Origin: Octopus sinensis
Lineage: Eukaryota
Length of the DNA: 19,054 nt
Direction: 5' to 3'
Assembly (NCBI RefSeq): GCF_006345805.1
Contig: NW_021824307.1
Coordinates: 1 to 19,054, forward strand
Shown: positions 1,870 to 19,054 of the stretch, in pieces
Numbering within the stretch: the first letter of the stretch is position 1
Layout of the letters: every line of letters begins with the position of its first letter
Notes under the pieces: model-generated
Told to the model about the DNA's origin: nothing
Seen by the model: the letters and a program-made list of their open reading frames with translations, nothing else
Databases searched by the model: none
Program-made: the position numbers and the translations under genes

Positions 1870-2090
1870 GGCGCATGCGTGGCTGTGTGGTAAGAAGCTT
1901 GCTTCCCCACCCACGTGGTTCTGGGTTCAGTCCCAATGCGAGGCACCTTGGGCAAGCGTCCACCATAGCCTCAAGCCGACCAAATCCTTGTGAGTGGATT
2001 TGGAGAGGGAAACTGAAAGGAACCTGTCCTATTTATATACCTGTGTGTATGTGTTTGTGTGTGCGTGTGTGTGTGTGTATGCGTTTTTGA
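1870..2090 (+). mobile_element. tRNA-derived SINE, type A (head, central domain and microsatellite), copy 1
   Basis: Pol III A-box-like TGGCTGTGTGG and B-box-like GGTTCAGTCCC, followed by CACCTTGGGCAAG (CORE-like). It aligns over ~160 bp with a second copy at 8219-8425. Confidence 0.9.
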
Positions 2091-2519: not shown

Positions 2520-3076
2520 ACATCCTTCTAAGAGATGGAAAATCTGATATAAAACCTGTGATTTCACGTGATTACTGGTCATCTCGCTTCGGCCTCTCAC
2601 TCGGTACTAACCACGGGGACTCAGAGATTGGTACTCGTGTTGTCCAGACGTTTATCATTATAACCCAATGACCTACTGATGTCTCTTTATGGTGACCTCA
2701 GCTGATTGTCCTATGACACTGGAAATGTAAATGAGGATGGAAGCGGACAATAAGTTACAACTTTCGTCTGTCACCTATGCTCCAAACGAAGCAGATCAGC
2801 AACACGAATGCAGAATCAGATGAGAGGTCATGGACGGAAAGTCAGAAATGCTATTGACAGCGAGGAAGCTGAAGGGCATGGCAATCATCTGTGAAGAAGG
2901 AGCAACCACCATATATAGTGTTCAATATTGTACAAAAAGAAAAACGAAAAAGGCAGAGGGCCGATGAGGGAGCCCCGAATAAGGTGTATGGCTTTGGCTC
3001 TTAGGAAAAATAGAAGAGTCATTAACTTCATTATCATCATTGGAGTCATTAATTTCAGGACTGCGTTCTTCTACAA

Positions 3077-3680
3077 CAGTGTTTCTCAACCAGGGTTCAT
3101 ATGTCACGTGGGAGTCCACATAAGATTCCAGTGTTGAAATTCATGTGTAATAAATTAGTTTTACTTCTGCAATACACAAAATATTTTCAAAATGTTTAAA
3201 ATACAATTTATTATATCTTTATATATAAAAGTAAGGTTGTATGCTGTCTGTCTCCTACGATTTAGATTCCTAACTACTCCCACATTTTGCGGTGCAGTTT
3301 AACCAAAACCGGGTATCTTATAGTCGTGATTCATATCGAGCCCTTCTGGGTATTAGCGCGCGTCTACGATGAGTCTACGATTTTAAAAATAATTTACCAT
3401 CAATTTTTCCCATTTTTAATGCATTTTTGGCATATATAAGGGAAGTAACTCTCTAAAAGTTTATTATTAAATCTCAGAACGTAAAAAGCTACAGTAACCC
3501 CCCCCCCTTTGTGGTTAACCATATTGAGATGGCTATTATACTTTACATCTCTAAAAATTCTTATATAGTTATTTCCCTTACAAACCCGAGCAACGCCGGG
3601 CGATACTGCTAGTTTAACTATAAAAATATAATAGAATTATTGAAACATCGGGATGTGAAGATCCCATAACCGTCCAGATT
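3077..3680. mobile_element. Probable degenerate hAT/Charlie-like MITE, interrupted by the Helitron
   Basis: Starts with CAGTGTTTCTCAACCAGGG, a typical hAT/Charlie terminus, followed by an AT-rich body on both sides of the Helitron. No right TIR or 8-bp TSD could be identified, so the right boundary is approximate. Confidence 0.45.
3216..3612 (+). mobile_element. Non-autonomous Helitron, apparently full length (397 bp)
   Basis: 5' end TCTTTATATATAAAAG; subterminal hairpin CCCGAGCAACGCCGGG (3585-3600); 3' end CTAG (3609-3612); inserted between host A (3215) and T (3613); no TSD. These are the canonical Helitron hallmarks. Confidence 0.85.
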
Positions 3681-3834
3681 TAGAGAGGTACACTCGAGGA
3701 AAATGTAGAAATAAAGTCCGTAGTGTTGATGGGATTTAAAGAGACAGGTAGATTAGTGTTGTCACACGTGAGAAAATAAATAAATAAAAGAAAAAAATAG
3801 CAACAACTGAAAGCAAGGAGAGCCTCTTCACGAT

Positions 3835-3985
3835 ACGTTCTGAGTTCAAATTCCGCCGAAGTCGACTTCGCCTTTCATCATTTCGCGGTCGATAAATTAA
3901 GTACCACGTGCGTACTGAGGTCGATTTAATCGATTGGTCCCCTCCCCCAAAATTTCGGGCCTTGTGCCTACAGTGATAAAGAATA
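3835..3985 (+). mobile_element. SINE type B, tail 1, 5'-truncated (array copy 1)
   Basis: ACGTTCTGAGTTCAAATTCCGCCGAAGTCGACTTCGCCTTTCATC...GGTCGATAAATTAAGTACCA plus the tail CCCTCCCCCAAAATTTCGGGCCTTGTGCCTA. Aligns to the other type B copies. Confidence 0.9.
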
Positions 3986-4000
3986 TGTATATGAATTTAC

Positions 4001-4212
4001 GGCGGTGAGCTGGCAGAAACGCTAGCACGCCGTGCGAAATGCTTAGCGGCATTTCGTCTGTCTTTACGTTCTGAGTTCAAATTGCACCAAGGTCGACTTT
4101 GCCTTTCATCCTTTCAGGGTCGATAAATTAAGTACCAGATGCGCACTAAGATTGATCTAATCGATTGGCTCCCTCCTCCTAAATTGTAGCCTTGTGCCTA
4201 GAGTAGGAAAGA
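4001..4212 (+). mobile_element. SINE type B, tail 1, full length (array copy 2)
   Basis: A-box-like GAGCTGGCAGAAACG head, B-box-like GAGTTCAAATT, central domain GCCTTTCATCCTTTCAGGGTCGATAAATTAAGTACCA (resembles a Meta-type domain, from recall) and tail 1. Confidence 0.92.
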
Positions 4213-4226
4213 TACATTACAGTAAT

Positions 4227-4443
4227 AATAGTTTCGAATCTTGGTAGCAGGCCAGAAATTTCGAGGGACGTGGTAAGTGGATTACACTGACCCCAGTAGT
4301 CAACTGGTATTAGTTTTATCGACCCTGAAATAATAAAATGCAAAGTTGACATGGGGGGAATTTGAACTCAGAATATAAAGACGGATGAAATGCCATTCAG
4401 CAGTGTGCCCGGCGTGCTAACAGTTCTGCCAACTCGTCATCAT
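4227..4443 (-). mobile_element. SINE type B, tail 1, full length, strongly diverged (array copy 3)
   Basis: The reverse complement aligns to copy 2 from head (GACGAGTTGGCAGAA) to tail (GAAATTTCTGGCC). Confidence 0.85.
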
Positions 4444-4458
4444 ATACATTAACAATCC

Positions 4459-4663
4459 TTTCTATTAAAGGTACAACGCCTGAAATTTGAGGCATGGGGC
4501 TAGTCGATTACATCGACCCCAGTGTTTAACTGGTACTCGTTTTATCGACCCTGAAATGATGAAAGTCGACCTCGGAGAAATTGGAAACCAGAAAGTAAAG
4601 ACGGGTGAAATACCACTAAGCATTTCATCCAGCGTGCTAACGACTCTGTCAGCTCGCCACTTC
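4459..4663 (-). mobile_element. SINE type B, tail 1, full length, diverged (array copy 4)
   Basis: The reverse complement aligns to copy 2; head GTGGCGAGCTGACAGAG. Confidence 0.87.
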
Positions 4664-4705
4664 ATACATTACAGTAATTATAAGGATAAATATGTCACAT
4701 GTATT

Positions 4706-4870
4706 CTTTTATACTCTAGGCACAAGGCCAGAAATTTTTGTGGAGAGGGTCAGTCGATTAGATCGAGACCGGTACGCAACTGGTACTTAATTTATCGACC
4801 CCGAAAGGATGAAAAGCAAAGTCGACCTCGGTGAAATTTGAACTCAGAGCATGAATACAGACGAAATACA
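4706..4870 (-). mobile_element. SINE type B, tail 1, 5'-truncated (array copy 5)
   Basis: Plus-strand TCTAGGCACAAGGCCAGAAATT...TGGTACTTAATTTATCGACCCCGAAAGGATGAAA...ACGAAATAC, directly abutted by the tail of copy 6. Confidence 0.9.
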
Positions 4871-5102
4871 TATTCTTTACAACCCACAAGGGGCTAAACA
4901 TAGAGGGGACAAACAAGGACAGACAAACGGATTAAGTCGATTATATCGACCACAGTGCGTAACTGTTACTTATTTAATCGACCCCGAAAGGATGAAAGGC
5001 AAAGTCGACCTCGGCGGAATTTGAACTCAGAACGTAAAGACAAACGAAATACCGCTAACATTTCGTCTAGAGTGCTAATGACTGCTGCTAGCTCACCGCC
5101 TT
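4871..5102 (-). mobile_element. SINE type B, tail 2, full length (array copy 6)
   Basis: Same head and central domain as the other copies, but a different tail (minus strand AATCCGTTTGTCTGTCCTTGTTTGTCCCCTCTATGTTTAGCCCCTTGTGGG). This tail is shared with the copy at 15181-15384. Confidence 0.92.
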
Positions 5103-5318
5103 ATACATTACAATAATTATAAGAATAAATATGTCACATATATTACGAAATAATCAATTTGCTGCTTGGTATATAAGCAATGATATATGTTAAATGTTCC
5201 TGATTTTGTTTTTAGTTGATAACGGGATTACGCAGGAAAATTTCCAAATGCAGTAACTAAAAACACCCACCATTTCCGGAGAAGAGATGTTTAAAATATG
5301 ATTATGTCTTTTAACATA

Positions 5319-5811
5319 CGATGGAGGACCGAAAAGTTCATATGGTGACTATGAAGGAGTGATGCTAGAGCTGTGAAATCTTGCATGCATTAGTTTCAAC
5401 TCGTCTTATTGATAACTGCATAAGTGTTTGGTGTCATAAGGACTAGGCTCCATCACCCAAGTCCTTGGTTCCACTGGCTGCTGTGCGTGACTGTGGCTTT
5501 GAACTGGATGTGCATCCCGATTTGGCCCCCAACTGACTATCATCTGTTCTCCTACATGAAAAAAAAACCCCAAAAATCCCCACCTGGTTTGGGACCAGTA
5601 ACACAGGGATGATGACGTCATATCTACCTTTGATGGCTTATTTGATCAACAGGATGAAAACTTCCTTACCGAATGGGTTCAAAGCATTGTAAGACCGATG
5701 GAAAAAAGTGTGTGGAACGGAAGTGGGTCTGTGTTGAAGAATAAACCTCATTCGATCACGCTGCATCAGGATATCTTGGTCAGTGCATGAACGTTGCAGC
5801 TGACCCTCTCG
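5319..5811 (+). mobile_element. Internally deleted mariner-type DNA transposon
   Basis: TA at 5317-5318 and 5812-5813. Degenerate TIRs (left CGATGGAGGACCGAAAAGTTCATATGGTGAC; right, reverse-complemented, CGAGAGGGTCAGCTGCAACGTTCATGCACTGAC). It contains a transposase C-terminal remnant. Confidence 0.8.
5459..5744 (+). pseudogene. Mariner (DD34D) transposase C-terminal remnant with frameshifts and stops
   Basis: Stitched translation: KSLVPLAAVRDCGFELDVHPDLAP/TDYHLFSYMKK...DDDVISTFDGLFDQQDENFLT/NGFKAL*DRWKK/CVERKWVCVEE*. This matches the mariner motifs YSPDLAP(S/T)D, FxxGIxxLxxRWxKC and xGxYVE. Confidence 0.85.
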
Positions 5812-5934
5812 TATATGGACAACATTTTGTTTCTTAATATCCTCTCGTTTTAACCATCATTACAATTCTTTGTGTTACTGTTCCAAACAAAAAATCATCT
5901 CATATATATACCAGCCTCATTGATAAGATTCTTT

Positions 5935-5937
5935 GTC

Positions 5938-5977
<40 letters not shown>

Positions 5978-6142
5978 TCCATACATATTCATACATATAT
6001 ACATATATTCATACATACATTCATTCACACTTAAAACACACGCACACACACACACATATATATATATGTATATATATACATATTCTATATGTATATTCGT
6101 GTGTGGGTGTATGTGTATGTATATACGTGAGTATATACATAC

Positions 6143-8218: not shown

Positions 8219-8425
8219 GCACAGTAGTGGCTGTGTGGTAAGTAGTTTGTTTACCAACCACATGGTTCTGGGTTCAGTCCCACTGCGTGGCACCTTGGGC
8301 AAGTGTCTTCTGCTATAGCCTCGGGCCGACCAAAGCCTTGTGAGTGGATTTGGTAGACGGAAACTGAAAGAAGCCCATCGTATATATGTATATATATATA
8401 TATGTGTGTGTGAGTTTGTGTGTAT
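8219..8425 (+). mobile_element. tRNA-derived SINE, type A, copy 2, next to a (TA)n tract
   Basis: GTGGCTGTGTGGTAAG...GGTTCAGTCCCACTGCGTGGCACCTTGGGCAAGTGTC...GGAAACTGAAAGAAGCCC, aligning with 1870-2040. Confidence 0.92.
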
Positions 8426-14134: not shown

Positions 14135-14345
14135 TTTCCTTTACTTGTTTAAGTCCTGGGGTCAGTGGTCATGCTGGAACACCGAGAGGAATAGTTCAGG
14201 CGAACAAATCGACCCTGTTACTAATTAGGTCGGCTACTTATTTTATCGATCGATTTGCTGAGCCGCAAGATGGCGGCTGTGAAAAGAAACCAACAGCGCT
14301 TGTCAAGCGGTTTTGGGAAGACAAATATAAACACAGGCACACATA
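14135..14345 (-). mobile_element. SINE 3' portion, type D (probably the 3' half of the type A family), diverged
   Basis: On the minus strand it has a central-domain-like GATAAAATAAGTAGC and ends CGGTGTTCCAGCATGACCACTG...AAACAAGTAAAGGAAA, similar to the LINE tail at 13532-13580. The link to type A is from recall and is not shown in this window. Confidence 0.65.
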
Positions 14346-14379: not shown

Positions 14380-14517
14380 TTATTTTTTTTTGTTCTTTTC
14401 TTCCCTTTTACGATCCCTCTTGATCGAAAACCTACGCCACCCTTTTTTTTTATCATCCCCCAAAAGAAAAGCTCTACCTTGTAACTGTGTGCAGCCCTGT
14501 GTGGCCAATAAAGAAAC

Positions 14518-14591
<74 letters not shown>

Positions 14592-14607
14592 GTCTGTCTG
14601 TCCGTCC

Positions 14608-14677
<70 letters not shown>

Positions 14678-14770
14678 TTATCTATCTATCGATCTGTCTG
14701 TATGTCTGTCTGTCTGTTTGTCTGTCTGTTTGTCTGTCTGTCTGCCTGTCAGTCTGTATATCTATCTATC
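14380..14770 (+). mobile_element. 5'-truncated 3' end of a non-LTR-retrotransposon-like repeat with a (TATC/TGTC)n tail (clade unassigned, L1/Tx1 plausible)
   Basis: TTTTACGATCCCTCTTGATCGAA...AAAAGAAAAGCTCTACCTTGTAA..CTGTGTGCAGCCCTGTGTGGCCAATAAAGAAAC then (TATC)n. A second copy lies on the minus strand at the end of the window. Confidence 0.75.
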
Positions 14771-14836
14771 AATATACGTGTGTATATGTGTATATGACGG
14801 GTCTCCATTTTAAGTCATTAATCGGTCTAAAACTGC

Positions 14837-14958: not shown

Positions 14959-15119
14959 TTATATCACTTAGGCCATCTAAGCCATCGTCAGCCTGTCCGA
15001 CGATGATTAAGACTTGGCAGACACTGTCAACAACATACTTTTATAACAATTATAAATTTGGAATGTCATTTTTTAAAATTATAACTGAACAGGACATCAA
15101 ACACACACACACAGACACA

Positions 15120-15158
<39 letters not shown>

Positions 15159-15180
15159 ACACATGCATATACATAAATAT

Positions 15181-15384
15181 ACGCCGGGCGAAATGCGTAG
15201 CCGTATTTCGTCTGTCGTTACGTTCTGAGTTCAAATTCTGCCGAGGTCGACTTTGCCTTTCATCCTTTCGGGGTCGATAAATTAAGTACCAGTTACGCAC
15301 TGGGGTCGAAGTAATCAATTTAATCCGTTTGTCTGTCCTTGTTTGTCCCCTCTGTGTTTAGCCCCTTGTGGGTAGTAAAGAAAT
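15181..15384 (+). mobile_element. SINE type B, tail 2, 5'-truncated, with an intact TSD
   Basis: Aligns to copy 6. It is flanked by a perfect direct repeat ATATACATAAATATACG (15167-15183 and 15385-15401); the last 3 nt overlap the SINE head. Confidence 0.93.
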
Positions 15385-15399
15385 ATATACATAAATATA

Positions 15400-15620
15400 C
15401 GGGGTCTGATCAATAAGTATCCGGACTGTTGCTATAGTAACGAAGCTAAAAGACGGAGAGTAAAGCCGTTTCGCACAGATTGACCTTGAATTCTGCTGTG
15501 AATGCGCACTAAGTTTTAACGTTCTACCTTACTTCTGCTGTTTACAGCAGTGCTTGGAAGGAAGGTGTGTAGCGCATGATCATCGCATTATCCATGACAA
15601 AGAATGTTAAGCAGCGGTTT
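15400..15620 (+). mobile_element. Left end of a second mariner-type transposon (TIR, 5' UTR and start of a decayed transposase)
   Basis: TA then CGGGGTCTGATCAATAAGTATCCGGAC, a mariner-style TIR. ATG at 15594 gives MTKNVKQR, resembling the MxxxxEQR start of mariner transposases. No right TIR was found. Confidence 0.6.
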
Positions 15621-15899: not shown

Positions 15900-16065
15900 T
15901 GGATGACTGTGATGATGATGATGATGAATAATGGTAGTAATGATGATGATGTTGATGATGATGATGCTGATGATGCTGATGATGAAGAAGAGTATGATGA
16001 TGATGATGATGATGATGGTGATGAAGAAGATGATGATGATGATGATGGTGATGATGAAGAAGAAT

Positions 16066-16100
<35 letters not shown>

Positions 16101-16712
16101 TAATGGTAGTAATGAAGTTAATGTTGATGATGATGATGATGACAATTATGACGTTGATGATTACGATGATGATGTTGATGATGATGGTGGTGGTGGTAGT
16201 CGTGGCTGTGATGATGATGATTATGAAGAAGAATATGTTGACGATAATGAATAATGGTAGCGATGATGATGATGTTGATGATGCTGATGATGCTGATGAT
16301 GAAATTAGTGACAATGAAGATGGCGACGACGACGACGATGACGGCGATGATGATGGTGATGAAGTTGATGATGGAGACGACCGATGATGATCATGATGAT
16401 GAGGATGGTAACGATGACGATGATGAGATTGAAGACGGTCATGATGATGACGACGACGACGATGATGATGATGATGAAGCTGATGACGATGATAACAACC
16501 ACGTCGACGACGATTATATAATTATAATAATGATGATGACGATAGTTACGACGAAGAAGACGACGGCAATGACGAGATCATTATGATAATTTTGACGATG
16601 ATGATGTCGACGAAGAAGACGACGAAGGTGATAATGGCGGTAATGAGATTATGATGATATTGATGGCGACAACGACAACGACGACGACGATGCGATGGTG
16701 ATCATGGTAATT

Positions 16713-16751
<39 letters not shown>

Positions 16752-16770
16752 GTGATGATGGTGATGGTGT
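15900..16770. repeat. (GAT)n/(GAC)n tract with internal higher-order repeats
   Basis: GAATAATGGTAG recurs at 15926, 16098 and 16249, and GAAGAAGA(G/A)TATG recurs three times. Confidence 0.9.
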
Positions 16771-16854
16771 TTTCTAGTGTTATTGTATTTGGATTTTCTT
16801 ATTAAAATTATCGGAGTTGGTCTACTTTACCGTTTTTGTAATTTCATGTATAAT

Positions 16855-16872
16855 ACAGCAGCAGTAGTTGTA

Positions 16873-16941
<69 letters not shown>

Positions 16942-17975
16942 TGGTGGTGGTGGTGGTAGTAGTAGTGGTGGTGACTCTGGTAGTAGTAGTAATAGTAGTG
17001 TGTTAGTAGTGGTGGTGATGGTGGTGGGAGTAGAAGTAGTAGTGGTAGTTGTAGTGGTAGTAGTATTAGTAGTTAGTAGTAGTGGTGGTGGTGATGATGG
17101 TGGCGGTTGTACTAGTAGTAGTATTAGTAGTAATGGTCGTGGTGGTGCTTGTAGTAGTAGTAGCAGTATTGGCGGTAGCAGTAGTTGTGATAAGAAGGAC
17201 TAGAGATGGGGGGGGGTGTAATGCTTGTCGATGTTGTAGTGGTTTTTATTGTCGCTATTTTTGTTGCTTTTGTTGATGCTGCTGCTGTTAATACTACCAA
17301 TATAATTCTCATAATCTTTGTTGCTGTTGTTATTGCTGCAATCCTCCTCCTCCTCCTTCTCCTCCTCCTCATCATCATCATCATTATCATCATCATCATC
17401 ATTGCAGTTGTCGTCGTCCTTTTCGATTTGGATTTTGTTTTTCTTGGAGTTATTTTCGTGCTTTTAAGTACAGAAGGGCTGTATAAGCAGCAGCAGCAGC
17501 AGCAGTAGTATTTGTAGTAGTAGTAGTAATAGTAGTAGTAGTAGTAGTAGTAGTAGCAGCAGCAGCATCAGCTAGAGCGGGAATAGTAGTAGTAGTCGTC
17601 TTGGTGGTGGTGGTGCTGGCGGAAATATTAGTAAAAGTAGTAACATCAATGGTTATGGAGGTCGTGGTGGTGGTAGTGGTGGTGTTAATGGTGGGGAGGC
17701 GGTGGTGTTGTTGCTGGTAAAGGTGGTGATGGTTGTGGTGGTGGCGGTGGAGATAGTTGTAATACTAGCAGCTACGATGATGGGTTAGCGGCGGTGGTGG
17801 TGGTAGTAGTAGTAGTAGTAGTGTTGGTGGTGGAAGTGGTGGTAGTAGTGCTGGTGGTAGTTGTAGTAATAATAGTAGTAACAGATGTAGTAGTAGTAAT
17901 AGTAGTAGTATTAGTGGTATTAGACGGAGGAATAGGAGGAGTACGTGTACATGTGGGAGTAGTGGTGGTGGGAGG
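16855..17975. repeat. Compound (GCA)n/(GTA)n/(GGT)n/(TCC)n/(ATC)n low-complexity region
   Basis: Direct inspection. Confidence 0.9.
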
Positions 17976-18260: not shown

Positions 18261-18420
18261 GGTAGAATGAAAGGACGAAGGAAAGAAACAAAAAAATAGC
18301 TAAGAAAGAACGAAAGGGAGAGGGAAAGAGAAAAAAGAAGGATTGTCAAAAATACGCTAAAAGAGCAAGTGAAGGTGGGGGGGGGGGGTGAACAAAGAGG
18401 GAGATAGATAGATAAATGAT
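18180..18420. repeat. Purine-rich (GAAA)n/(GA)n tract
   Basis: Direct inspection. Confidence 0.85.
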
Positions 18421-18488
18421 AGATAGAAAGACAGAGAGACAGAGAGACAGACAGATATATAGGTAGATGATACATAGATAGAGAGATT

Positions 18489-18546
<58 letters not shown>

Positions 18547-18595
18547 CAGATAGATAGATACATAGATAGACAGATAGATAGACAGACAGATAGAC

Positions 18596-18633
<38 letters not shown>

Positions 18634-18667
18634 ACGGATAGACAGATAGATAGATAGATAGATAGAC

Positions 18668-18709
<42 letters not shown>

Positions 18710-19054
18710 GAAGAGAGAGAGAGAGAGGGAGAAAGAGAGAGAGAAAGAGATAGACAGATACGTAGTTAGATAGATAGATAGATATATATGTTTCTTTATT
18801 AGCCACATAGGGCTGCACACAGATAGAACAAATTACAAGGTAGAGCTTTTCTTTTGAAGGTTTAAAAAAAAAAAAAGCAAAGGGGGGAGTTTCGATCAAA
18901 AGGGATCGTAAAAGGAGAGAAAGAGGACAAAAAGGGGTGGTTAAAAAAAGGGGGAGAGAAAAAATTGATCAATAGGGATCGTTATCACAGAAATGTCAAT
19001 ATGAAGTGTAAAGGGGAGGACAGGTGAGGTTTACCCGTGGAAAGAAAAGCCTAC
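18420..19054 (-). mobile_element. Second copy of the LINE-like 3' end with a long (TATC)n tail, running off the window
   Basis: The reverse complement of 18789-18910 matches 14410-14520 (CCTTGTAATTTGTTCTATCTGTGTGCAGCCCTATGTGGCTAATAAAGAAAC). (GATA)n lies at 18420-18785. Confidence 0.78.

What the first reader, a model, noticed from the sequence alone, without database searches (positions are those of the whole stretch)
4212..5144. Stacked, polarised SINE array punctuated by one recurring target motif (repeat-spacer architecture)
Seen: the motif ATACATTACAGTAAT or a variant occurs at 4212-4226, 4444-4456, 4664-4678 and 5103-5117. It separates minus-strand SINE copies 3, 4 and 5+6. The 5' end of each full-length copy (3, 4, 6) is followed immediately by the first base of the motif. 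By eye, divergence from the better-preserved copies falls from copy 3 to copy 4 to copies 5/6, and the copies differ in tail type, which argues against simple tandem duplication. Inference: successive independent insertions each duplicated the same target and landed 13-42 bp upstream of the previous SINE's start, so the array grew in one direction. One mechanism would be integration guided by the Pol III machinery at the resident SINE promoter, by analogy with yeast Ty3 and Dictyostelium TRE5 targeting upstream of tRNA genes. Copy 1 also ends ~15 bp upstream of copy 2. I do not know of this being described for cephalopod SINEs, but I cannot check the literature.
Basis: partly seen in the sequence, partly recalled or inferred. 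Interest (0 to 1): 0.8.

Follow-up and report, generated by a model that had tools for sequence, protein, structure and literature searches.

The report
Octopus SINEs stacked at one target
Several copies of one octopus short retrotransposon (SINE) sit head-to-tail, separated by copies of the same short AT-rich target sequence; this most likely shows repeated insertion into one favoured cutting site that each insertion re-creates, a known way of building tandem transposon arrays, and not a new targeting system.

Summary
Window 3828-5102 holds six copies of one Octopus SINE family. Four minus-strand copies (c3-c6) are separated by ATACATTACAGTAAT or variants: 3 hits with at most 1 mismatch against 0.03 expected. 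Four same-orientation neighbours lie 45 bp or less apart, against 0.05 expected.

New details:
- The repeat around c5+c6 is 42 bp (39/42 identical), not 15.
- Only c6 has a different tail.
- The 4444 variant matches the others exactly over 8 nt only.
- The minus-strand bond after AATGTAT is the priming nick of plus-strand c2. It is also the second-strand break of c3, c4 and c5/c6.

Best explanation: repeated LINE-mediated insertion into one preferred nick site. The target-site duplication regenerates that site upstream of each new copy, so the array grows head-ward. Divergence falls 24%, 18%, 11%, 10% from c3 to c6.

Not settled: c3 and c4 share 13 derived bases (2.4 expected), so a local duplication of that pair is not excluded.

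Pol III guidance is not supported. The first array member had no resident SINE, and two stackings sit on 5'-truncated residents that lack promoter boxes. The motif is not part of the SINE consensus.

No octopus genome could be reached, so no genome-wide test was run. This is a new example of a known kind, of moderate interest.

The parts
3828..3984 (+). SINE copy c1, 5'-truncated, type A tail
   Evidence: nhmmer E=1.4e-45; alignment; 13.6% from the consensus
3985..3998 (.). 14-16 bp spacer ATGTATATGAATTT(AC) between the c1 tail and the c2 head
   Evidence: read directly; it holds ATGTAT; no TSD partner was found
3999..4211 (+). SINE copy c2, full length, type A tail; its 3' end abuts the motif at 4212
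   Evidence: nhmmer E=3.5e-66; 10.1% from the consensus; its priming nick lies after ...AATGTAT on the minus strand
4212..4226 (-). Motif copy M1 (ATTACTGTAATGTAT in SINE orientation): 3' target-site duplication of c3, lying between the tails of c2 and c3
   Evidence: exact 15-mer, identical to 4664-4678
4227..4443 (-). SINE copy c3, full length, type A tail, the most diverged copy (oldest)
   Evidence: nhmmer E=5.8e-58; 24.1% from the consensus and 47% of CpG sites changed
4444..4456 (-). Motif copy M2 (ATTGTTAATGTAT): junction between the c4 tail and the c3 head; only TAATGTAT is exact
   Evidence: either a decayed 13-15 bp TSD, or an 8-bp TSD plus the 3' end of c4
4457..4663 (-). SINE copy c4, full length, type A tail
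   Evidence: nhmmer E=1.5e-58; 18.0% from the consensus; shares 13 derived states with c3
4664..4705 (-). X: 42-bp 3' copy of the target duplication flanking c5+c6; its first 15 plus-strand bases are motif copy M3
   Evidence: 39/42 identical to 5103-5144, with three G/A differences
4706..4869 (-). SINE copy c5, type A tail, 5'-truncated at consensus GTATTTCG (no box A candidates remain)
   Evidence: nhmmer E=1.5e-49, model positions 50-212; 10.8% from the consensus
4870..5102 (-). SINE copy c6, full length, type B tail (shared with c7 and with the type B copy of L001), fused to c5 with 0-6 nt between them
   Evidence: 92% identical to c7; junction TTGTAAAGAATATGTATTTCGTCTG; head is the consensus GGCGGTGAG, unlike c3 and c4
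5103..5144 (-). X': 42-bp 5' copy of the target duplication of the c5+c6 insertion; its first 15 plus-strand bases are motif copy M4
15167..15400 (+). Reference single insertion: c7 (15183-15384, type B, 5'-truncated), flanked by a perfect 16-bp TSD ATATACATAAATATAC (15167-15182 and 15385-15400)
   Evidence: it shows the family's normal TSD length and a target that starts with ATAC

Best explanation
The locus is a retrotransposition hot spot hit at least four or five times by one LINE-dependent Octopus SINE family.

The target is a short AT-rich sequence. In SINE orientation it reads ...AATAYATGTGACATATTTATYCTTATA-ATTACTGTAATGTAT. It offers favoured nick and priming sites on both strands, each ending in ...GTAT or ...GTAAT.

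In target-primed reverse transcription the duplicated target ends up on both sides of the insert. An intact copy of the target, including the second-strand break site after AATGTAT, is therefore re-created immediately upstream of the new SINE's head. The next insertion re-uses it. This gives head-to-tail copies separated by one TSD, with the youngest copy most upstream.

Proposed order of events:
1. c3 inserted, with a TSD of 13-15 bp.
2. c4 inserted, with a TSD of 8-15 bp.
3. c5 inserted, with a 42-bp TSD that begins at a second nick site 27 bp further upstream.
4. c6 was joined to the truncated c5, either by template switching in the same event or by a further insertion with a 6-bp ATGTAT duplication.
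Plus-strand c2 was primed from the very same minus-strand bond.

Shown: the anatomy, the break points, the age gradient, the different subfamily of c6, and the excess of stacking.
Inferred: the endonuclease and priming preference, the order of events, and that c3 and c4 are separate insertions.
For: - Motif recurrence is far above chance.
- Four stacked same-orientation neighbours against 0.05 expected; none of 200,000 simulations reaches 3.
- The family makes TSDs of about 16 bp (c7, perfect 16/16), which matches the 13-15 bp spacers.
- The 42-bp repeat encloses c5+c6 exactly (39/42).
- c6 belongs to another tail subfamily and has the consensus head, so it is not a copy of c4.
- Divergence falls from c3 to c6.
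- The motif is absent upstream of the full-length copies c2 and L001 type B.
- The bond after AATGTAT is both the priming nick of c2 and the second-strand break of c3, c4 and c5/c6.
- 5 of 7 independent priming nicks end in GTAT or GTAAT. P is about 1e-5 even with a slop of 2 nt either way, but the motif was chosen after seeing the data.
- An independent contig, L001, shows the same stacking of a type B copy on a truncated type A copy.
- Precedent 1: double insertion at a preferred target gives tandem transposons with the TSD in the junction (PMC5932611).
- Precedent 2: TSD starts correlate with the SINE 3' end (PMC6007223).
Against: - c3 and c4 share 13 derived states (6 exclusive to the pair) against 2.4 expected. 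With only eight or nine copies I cannot tell subfamily markers from mutations that preceded a local duplication.
- Standard target-primed reverse transcription predicts a fixed first nick and a variable second nick. Here the second-strand break is the constant point and the first nick varies (TSDs of about 8-15, 42 and possibly 6 bp).
- The nick-site motif was defined after the fact. The exact 3' end of the SINE is ambiguous by 2-4 nt because of microhomology.
- No genome-wide data could be obtained.
Confidence: 0.55

Rival explanations
1. Mixed origin. A single old SINE flanked by its 15-bp TSD was duplicated locally, by unequal exchange or slippage between the two TSD copies. This gave TSD-c4-TSD-c3-TSD. 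Only c5/c6 (and c2) are later independent insertions into the same sequence.
For: - c3 and c4 share 13 derived states against 2.4 expected. Six are exclusive to the pair and are spread over columns 4-144.
- Both have the same tail type and similar unit lengths (230 and 220 bp).
- Once a dimer exists, unequal exchange is easy (PMC5932611).
Against: - c4 also shares 5 derived states with the L001 type B copy, which is on an unrelated contig. Shared states can therefore reflect subfamily structure.
- Private changes are unequal (27 against 16, two-sided p about 0.13). The 5' ends and tails differ.
- An exchange on only 15 bp of homology is rare, and double insertion was found to be the main source of dimers (PMC5932611).
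- This rival still needs target re-use for c5/c6 and c2.
Confidence: 0.25
2. Guidance by the resident SINE. Pol III factors, or another feature of the resident SINE's head, tether the LINE/SINE particle. The break then falls at the resident's transcription start and new copies land just upstream, as with Ty3 or TRE5-A at tRNA genes.
For: - The constant point in c4-on-c3 and c5-on-c4 is exactly the resident's 5' end, while the TSD length varies.
- 5 of 8 copies seen have a same-orientation SINE 45 bp or less downstream.
- Targeting of Pol III genes by retrotransposons is established in yeast and Dictyostelium (PMC3159450, PMC5911963).
Against: - c3, the first array member, used the same break with no resident SINE downstream. 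Oppositely oriented c2 was primed from that same bond.
- c6 is stacked on c5, which lacks every box A candidate. The L001 type B copy is stacked on a type A fragment that lacks both boxes.
- Spacers of 0-6, about 10, 13, 14-16 and 42 bp show no fixed distance.
- No tRNA gene is in the window, so this could not be tested there.
- c7 is a normal solo insertion.
Confidence: 0.12
3. The motif is part of the element. It would be a 5' leader or 3' extension carried by some source genes, so the 'spacers' would be SINE sequence and not target.
For: - c1 and c6 both read AAAGAATATGTAT at their 3' ends, and c2 and c5 read AAAGA(A)TACAT.
- The exact 3' terminus is uncertain by a few nucleotides.
Against: - The full-length copies c2 and L001 type B have unrelated 5' flanks.
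- The perfect TSD of c7 shows that ATATACAT... there comes from the target.
- The 42-bp X/X' repeat has no counterpart at any other copy.
Confidence: 0.05

Closest known systems
Tandem transposon dimers made by double insertion at one preferred target (P-element, jockey and others in Drosophila; McGurk and Barbash 2018, PMC5932611)
   Same: Head-to-tail or tail-to-internal copies. The junction holds one TSD-length copy of the target. Dimers form at sites that fit the element's target preference best.
   Different: Here the element is a non-autonomous SINE in a cephalopod. There are at least three successive hits and not two, the TSD lengths vary (about 8-15 and 42 bp), and there is a visible age polarity. 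The target preference is inferred from only seven sites.
Insertion signatures of stringent LINE/SINE pairs: TSD starts linked to the 3'-terminal repeat of the RNA (Nishiyama and Ohshima 2018, PMC6007223)
   Same: The start of the TSD resembles the 3' end of the SINE. Here that is AAAGAATAY followed by targets that start with AT(T)AC or ATAT, which suggests that microhomology selects the priming nick.
   Different: The T-stretch about 10 nt upstream that defines the RTE signature was not examined. The partner LINE is unknown.
Sequence-specific APE-type LINEs that target microsatellites (Waldo at ACAY, Dong at TAA, Mino at AC; reviewed in PMC3812793)
   Same: Repeated insertion into a short AT/AC-rich motif set by endonuclease specificity. 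The targets here contain ATACAT/ATGTAT, which resemble ACAY units.
   Different: The target here is not a microsatellite array. No LINE was identified. The resemblance is a lead and was not tested.
Pol III-directed integration (Ty3 at the transcription start; TRE5-A about 50 bp upstream of tRNA genes; PMC3159450, PMC5911963)
   Same: New copies lie immediately upstream of a Pol III-type promoter element in a fixed orientation.
   Different: There is no fixed distance. Stacking also occurs on residents without a promoter. The first event had no resident. No protein link can be tested here.
Chimeric retrocopies made by template switching (U6-L1-type chimeras; see 10.1101/2025.02.02.635956, abstract listed)
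   Same: c6 (full length) is fused directly to 5'-truncated c5, and one 42-bp duplication encloses both.
   Different: Both partners are SINEs of one family. A two-step history with a 6-bp ATGTAT duplication fits equally well.

Membership tests
tRNA-type, LINE-dependent SINE (Octopus family) | Dispersed multicopy element of 150-300 bp with 5' truncations and target-site duplications | tested here: met
   Seven copies in the window plus a weak fragment. Two copies lie on the unrelated contig L001. c1, c5 and c7 are truncated. c7 has a perfect 16-bp TSD. SINE-derived peptides occur in three O. bimaculoides UniRef proteins.
tRNA-type, LINE-dependent SINE (Octopus family) | Internal Pol III promoter (boxes A and B) and a tRNA-derived head | tested here: inconclusive
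   A box B-like GAGTTCAAATTCC and candidate A boxes are seen by eye in the consensus. ARAGORN finds no tRNA and Rfam has no tRNA match in 3000-6000.
tRNA-type, LINE-dependent SINE (Octopus family) | 3' tail shared with a partner LINE | not testable with these tools
   No octopus LINE sequences could be reached.
Multiple insertion at one target site (tandem transposons with the TSD in the junction) | The junction between copies holds one TSD-length copy of the target, identical to the outer TSDs | tested here: met
   4444-4456 lies between c4 and c3 (13 nt, 8 of them exact). 4212-4226 equals 4664-4678 (15/15). 4664-4705 matches 5103-5144 at 39/42. The family's TSD is 16 bp at c7.
Multiple insertion at one target site (tandem transposons with the TSD in the junction) | The copies are independent insertions, not duplicates of each other | tested here: inconclusive
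   Met for c6 and c5 against c4: different tail, truncation, consensus head. Open for c3 against c4: 13 shared derived states against 2.4 expected.
Multiple insertion at one target site (tandem transposons with the TSD in the junction) | The target fits the element's general insertion preference | tested here: inconclusive
   5 of 7 priming nicks end in GTAT or GTAAT. The sample is tiny and the motif was chosen after seeing the data.
Pol III-complex-guided integration (Ty3, TRE5-A type) | Depends on an assembled Pol III promoter in the resident gene | tested here: not met
   c6 is stacked on c5, which has no box A. The L001 type B copy is stacked on a fragment that begins after box B. c3 used the same break with no resident present.
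Pol III-complex-guided integration (Ty3, TRE5-A type) | Narrow, fixed distance from the transcription start | tested here: inconclusive
   The second-strand break lies at position 0 in two events, but the 3' ends of the new copies lie 0-6, about 10, 13, 14-16 and 42 bp upstream.
Pol III-complex-guided integration (Ty3, TRE5-A type) | Genome-wide enrichment upstream of tRNA genes; binding of the element's protein to TFIIIB or TFIIIC | not testable with these tools
   There is no tRNA gene in the window. No octopus genome is in any collection I could search.
Local tandem duplication of a SINE+TSD unit | The copies share private mutations and are of equal age | tested here: inconclusive
   c3 and c4 have 13 shared states, 6 of them exclusive. 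Private changes are 27 against 16. c6 is excluded because it has a different tail and head.

The most novel reading that the evidence does not exclude
Octopus SINEs, or their partner LINE, might sense a resident SINE head. The sensor could be Pol III factors, chromatin at the promoter, or pairing between the RNA and the DNA. The break would then be placed exactly at the resident's 5' end, so SINE arrays would grow head-ward genome-wide. That would be the first Pol III-linked targeting of a non-LTR element described in an animal.
Probability: 0.1. Interest if true: 0.8.

Novelty: new member of a known kind. Interest (0 to 1): 0.4.

Why it matters
SINEs make up about 8-12% of octopus genomes (11.6% in O. 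vulgaris, PMC13282606), and their insertion rules are essentially undescribed. My literature searches found no account of stacking or of a target preference for them.

If stacking through regenerated targets is general, it would explain local SINE clusters. It would give a sequence logo for the partner LINE's endonuclease. It would supply dimers from which satellites can grow. It would also warn annotators that adjacent SINE copies with shared spacers are not simple tandem repeats.

This locus also shows several steps of an array's growth in one place.

Tried and rejected
Attempts to obtain more octopus SINE loci:
- Protein searches with all open SINE reading frames gave one 543-bp metagenome contig (L001) and three O. 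bimaculoides UniRef proteins.
- The genes of those proteins, and a window ORF, are not on record.
- DNA scans of the metagenome, prokaryote genome and viral collections with SINE core patterns found nothing.
- A full-text search for SINE sequence strings found nothing.
The genome-wide and orthologous-locus tests were therefore impossible.

Ideas considered and rejected:
- The 42-bp repeat continues into the SINE head, so that c6's head was copied from c4 by homology-assisted second-strand priming. Rejected: c6 has the consensus GGCGGTGAG, whereas c3 and c4 share a two-base variant. c6 is also no closer to c4 than to the L001 type B copy in its first 45 nt.
- The 42-mer forms a hairpin or cruciform. 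Rejected: folding z-scores are 0.2-0.4.
- The sequence after c7 is a truncated SINE. Rejected: nhmmer does not detect it.
- The identity of 4212 and 4664 clashes with the age of c3 (one search gives P of no change in 30 nt = 0.016 at c3's 12.9% private non-CpG divergence). Resolved: X and X' differ by 7%, while c5 and c6 each differ by about 9% from the consensus at non-CpG sites. Distance to this small consensus therefore overstates age by a factor of about 2.5.
- 5400-5800 is a mariner-like transposase remnant, as it looked by eye. Pfam finds nothing.

Full report
**What is there.**
Self-comparison, alignment and a profile scan find seven copies of one SINE family in the 19-kb window. Six lie within 3828-5102.
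- c1: about 3828-3984, plus strand, 5'-truncated.
- c2: 3999-4211, plus strand, full length.
- c3: 4227-4443, minus strand.
- c4: 4457-4663, minus strand.
- c5: 4706-4869, minus strand, 5'-truncated at consensus GTATTTCG.
- c6: 4870-5102, minus strand.
- c7: 15183-15384, plus strand.

The family belongs to Octopus. Peptides translated from the consensus match SINE-derived stretches in three O. bimaculoides UniRef proteins at 82-93% identity. ARAGORN and Rfam see no tRNA. A box B-like GAGTTCAAATTCC is visible by eye. There are two tail types. c1-c5 have type A. c6, c7 and a copy on contig L001 have type B.

**Checking the observation.**
ATACATTACAGTAAT is exact at 4212 and 4664 and has one mismatch at 5103. 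That is 3 hits with at most 1 mismatch against 0.03 expected, and 0 of 200 shuffles reach 3. The 4444 variant shares only 8 exact bases with the others. The heads of c3, c4 and c6 abut the motif. Divergence from the consensus falls 24.1%, 18.0%, 10.8%, 10.2% from c3 to c6.

Four same-orientation neighbours lie 45 bp or less apart, against 0.05 expected, and none of 200,000 random placements reaches 3.

Three corrections are needed.
- The repeat around c5+c6 is 42 bp (4664-4705 and 5103-5144). It is 39/42 identical, and all three differences are G/A.
- Only c6 differs in tail type.
- The motif at 4212 lies between the tails of c2 and c3.

**Are the spacers target-site duplications?**
c7 is a clean single insertion with a perfect 16-bp duplication, ATATACATAAATATAC (15167-15182 and 15385-15400). 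The family therefore makes TSDs of about 15 bp, which is the size of the spacers.

The motif is not SINE sequence. The two full-length copies outside the array have unrelated 5' flanks: c2 has ...GAATTT, and the type B copy on L001 has ...TTGTTGTTGTT.

**Independent insertions or local duplication?**
c6 is independent of c4. It has the type B tail and is 92% identical to c7. It keeps the consensus head GGCGGTGAG, whereas c3 and c4 share GTGGCGAG/ATGACGAG.

c5+c6 are enclosed by the single 42-bp duplication. c6 is fused to truncated c5 through ...AAAGAATAT-GTATTTCG.... This fits a template switch within one event. It fits equally a later insertion with a 6-bp ATGTAT duplication.

c3 and c4 are not resolved. 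They share 13 derived states against 2.4 expected, six of them exclusive to the pair and spread along the element. c4 also shares 5 states with the unrelated L001 copy, so shared states can be subfamily markers. With nine sequences I cannot separate the two readings.

**The break points.**
In SINE orientation, every minus-strand event ends its duplication at the same bond, ...AATGTAT|. This bond lies directly before the head of the older copy, or before the tail of c2 in the case of c3.

The upstream ends differ. They give TSDs of 13-15 bp (c3), 8-15 bp (c4) and 42 bp (c5).

The same minus-strand bond is where plus-oriented c2 joins its 3' end. That makes it c2's priming nick. One phosphodiester bond, or its duplicated copies, was therefore cut in four or five events in both orientations.

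Across all copies, 5 of 7 independent priming nicks end in GTAT or GTAAT. The TSDs start with ATAC or ATTAC, next to a SINE 3' end that reads AAAGAATAY. By chance P is about 1e-5 even with a slop of 2 nt either way, but the motif was chosen after seeing the data.

The 42-mer is bounded by inverted ATACAT...ATGTAT, so both of its breaks fall after ATGTAT on their own strands. It has no notable fold.

**Mechanism.**
Target-primed reverse transcription leaves the duplicated target on both sides of the insert. The intact upstream context plus target, including the favoured AATGTAT| break, is re-created just upstream of the new head. A site that fits the enzyme well is therefore still there after each hit, and the array grows head-ward. 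This matches the age gradient.

Double insertion at preferred sites is the documented main source of tandem transposon dimers. Those dimers carry the TSD in the junction, and non-LTR elements show tail-to-internal junctions (PMC5932611). Links between the 3' end of the RNA and the start of the TSD are documented for RTE-type SINEs (PMC6007223). APE-type LINEs that target ACAY, AC or TAA repeats exist (PMC3812793).

**Why Pol III guidance is not needed.**
- c3 had no resident SINE downstream, yet used the same break.
- c2 used the same bond in the opposite orientation.
- c6 sits on c5, which has lost every box A candidate.
- On the independent contig L001, a type B copy sits 11 nt or less upstream of a type A fragment that begins after box B.
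- The spacers are 0-6, about 10, 13, 14-16 and 42 bp, so there is no fixed distance. TRE5-A, by contrast, inserts at about 50 bp (PMC3159450).

The constant point is the resident's 5' end, while the first nick varies. This is the reverse of the textbook expectation, so the idea keeps some probability.

**Limits.**
No octopus genome is in any collection I could reach. The proposed genome-wide distance test, the subfamily tree and the orthologous-locus comparison were not done. Ages taken from distance to a nine-sequence consensus are inflated. X and X' differ by 7%, while c5 and c6 each differ from the consensus by about 9% at non-CpG sites.

**Verdict.**
This is a real and statistically strong stacked SINE array. 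It is best read as repeated insertion into a self-regenerating preferred target, which makes it a new example of a known process. A local duplication of c3/c4 is a live partial alternative. Pol III guidance is unsupported.

Noticed in passing
L001 (543-bp ENA metagenome contig, sample ERZ23499442), reverse strand about 144-463: An independent locus repeats the pattern. A full-length type B SINE is followed within 11 nt or less by a 5'-truncated type A SINE in the same orientation. The contig is evidently cephalopod DNA within a metagenome assembly.
   Followed up: partly
window 15100-15400: c7 is inserted at the edge of a (CA)n tract and has a perfect 16-bp TSD. Its 5' truncation point is GCCGGGCG. 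It is the youngest copy, 5.8% from the consensus.
   Followed up: yes
window 14173-14251 (-): A weak extra match to the SINE profile (E=0.0016, model positions 119-192). It may be an old fragment.
   Followed up: no
window 8227-8315 (-) and 1871-1950 (-); L001 reverse strand 1-96: A second, unrelated tRNA-like SINE family. It is about 82% identical between the window and L001 and carries a GGTTC...-type box B.
   Followed up: partly
window about 5400-5800 (+): Frame-shifted reading frames with ...HPDLAPNDYHLF... and ...FLTEWVQSIVRPMEK... look by eye like the C-terminus of a mariner/Tc1 transposase. Pfam finds nothing, so this stays a recollection-based lead. The SINE array lies where the N-terminal part would be.
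   Followed up: partly
P0002-P0004 (UniRef, Octopus bimaculoides): Annotated EF-hand, MFS and cytochrome P450 proteins contain stretches of about 40 aa translated from this SINE (82-93% identity). These are either exonised SINEs or annotation artefacts.
   Followed up: no
window 14479-14793 and 18402-18828: Long (TATC/TCTG)n and (AGAT)n tetranucleotide arrays form a 315-nt inverted repeat, 77% complementary, with about 3.7 kb between the arms.
   Followed up: no
window 15910-17920: About 2 kb of imperfect trinucleotide tracts, (TGA)n, (CAG)n, (AGT)n and (TGG)n, give long low-complexity open frames. No real gene was recognised anywhere in the window.
   Followed up: no
window 4664-4705 and 5103-5144: All three differences between the two 42-bp copies are G in the downstream copy and A in the upstream copy. 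At the one position that can be polarised with 4212-4226, G is ancestral.
   Followed up: partly
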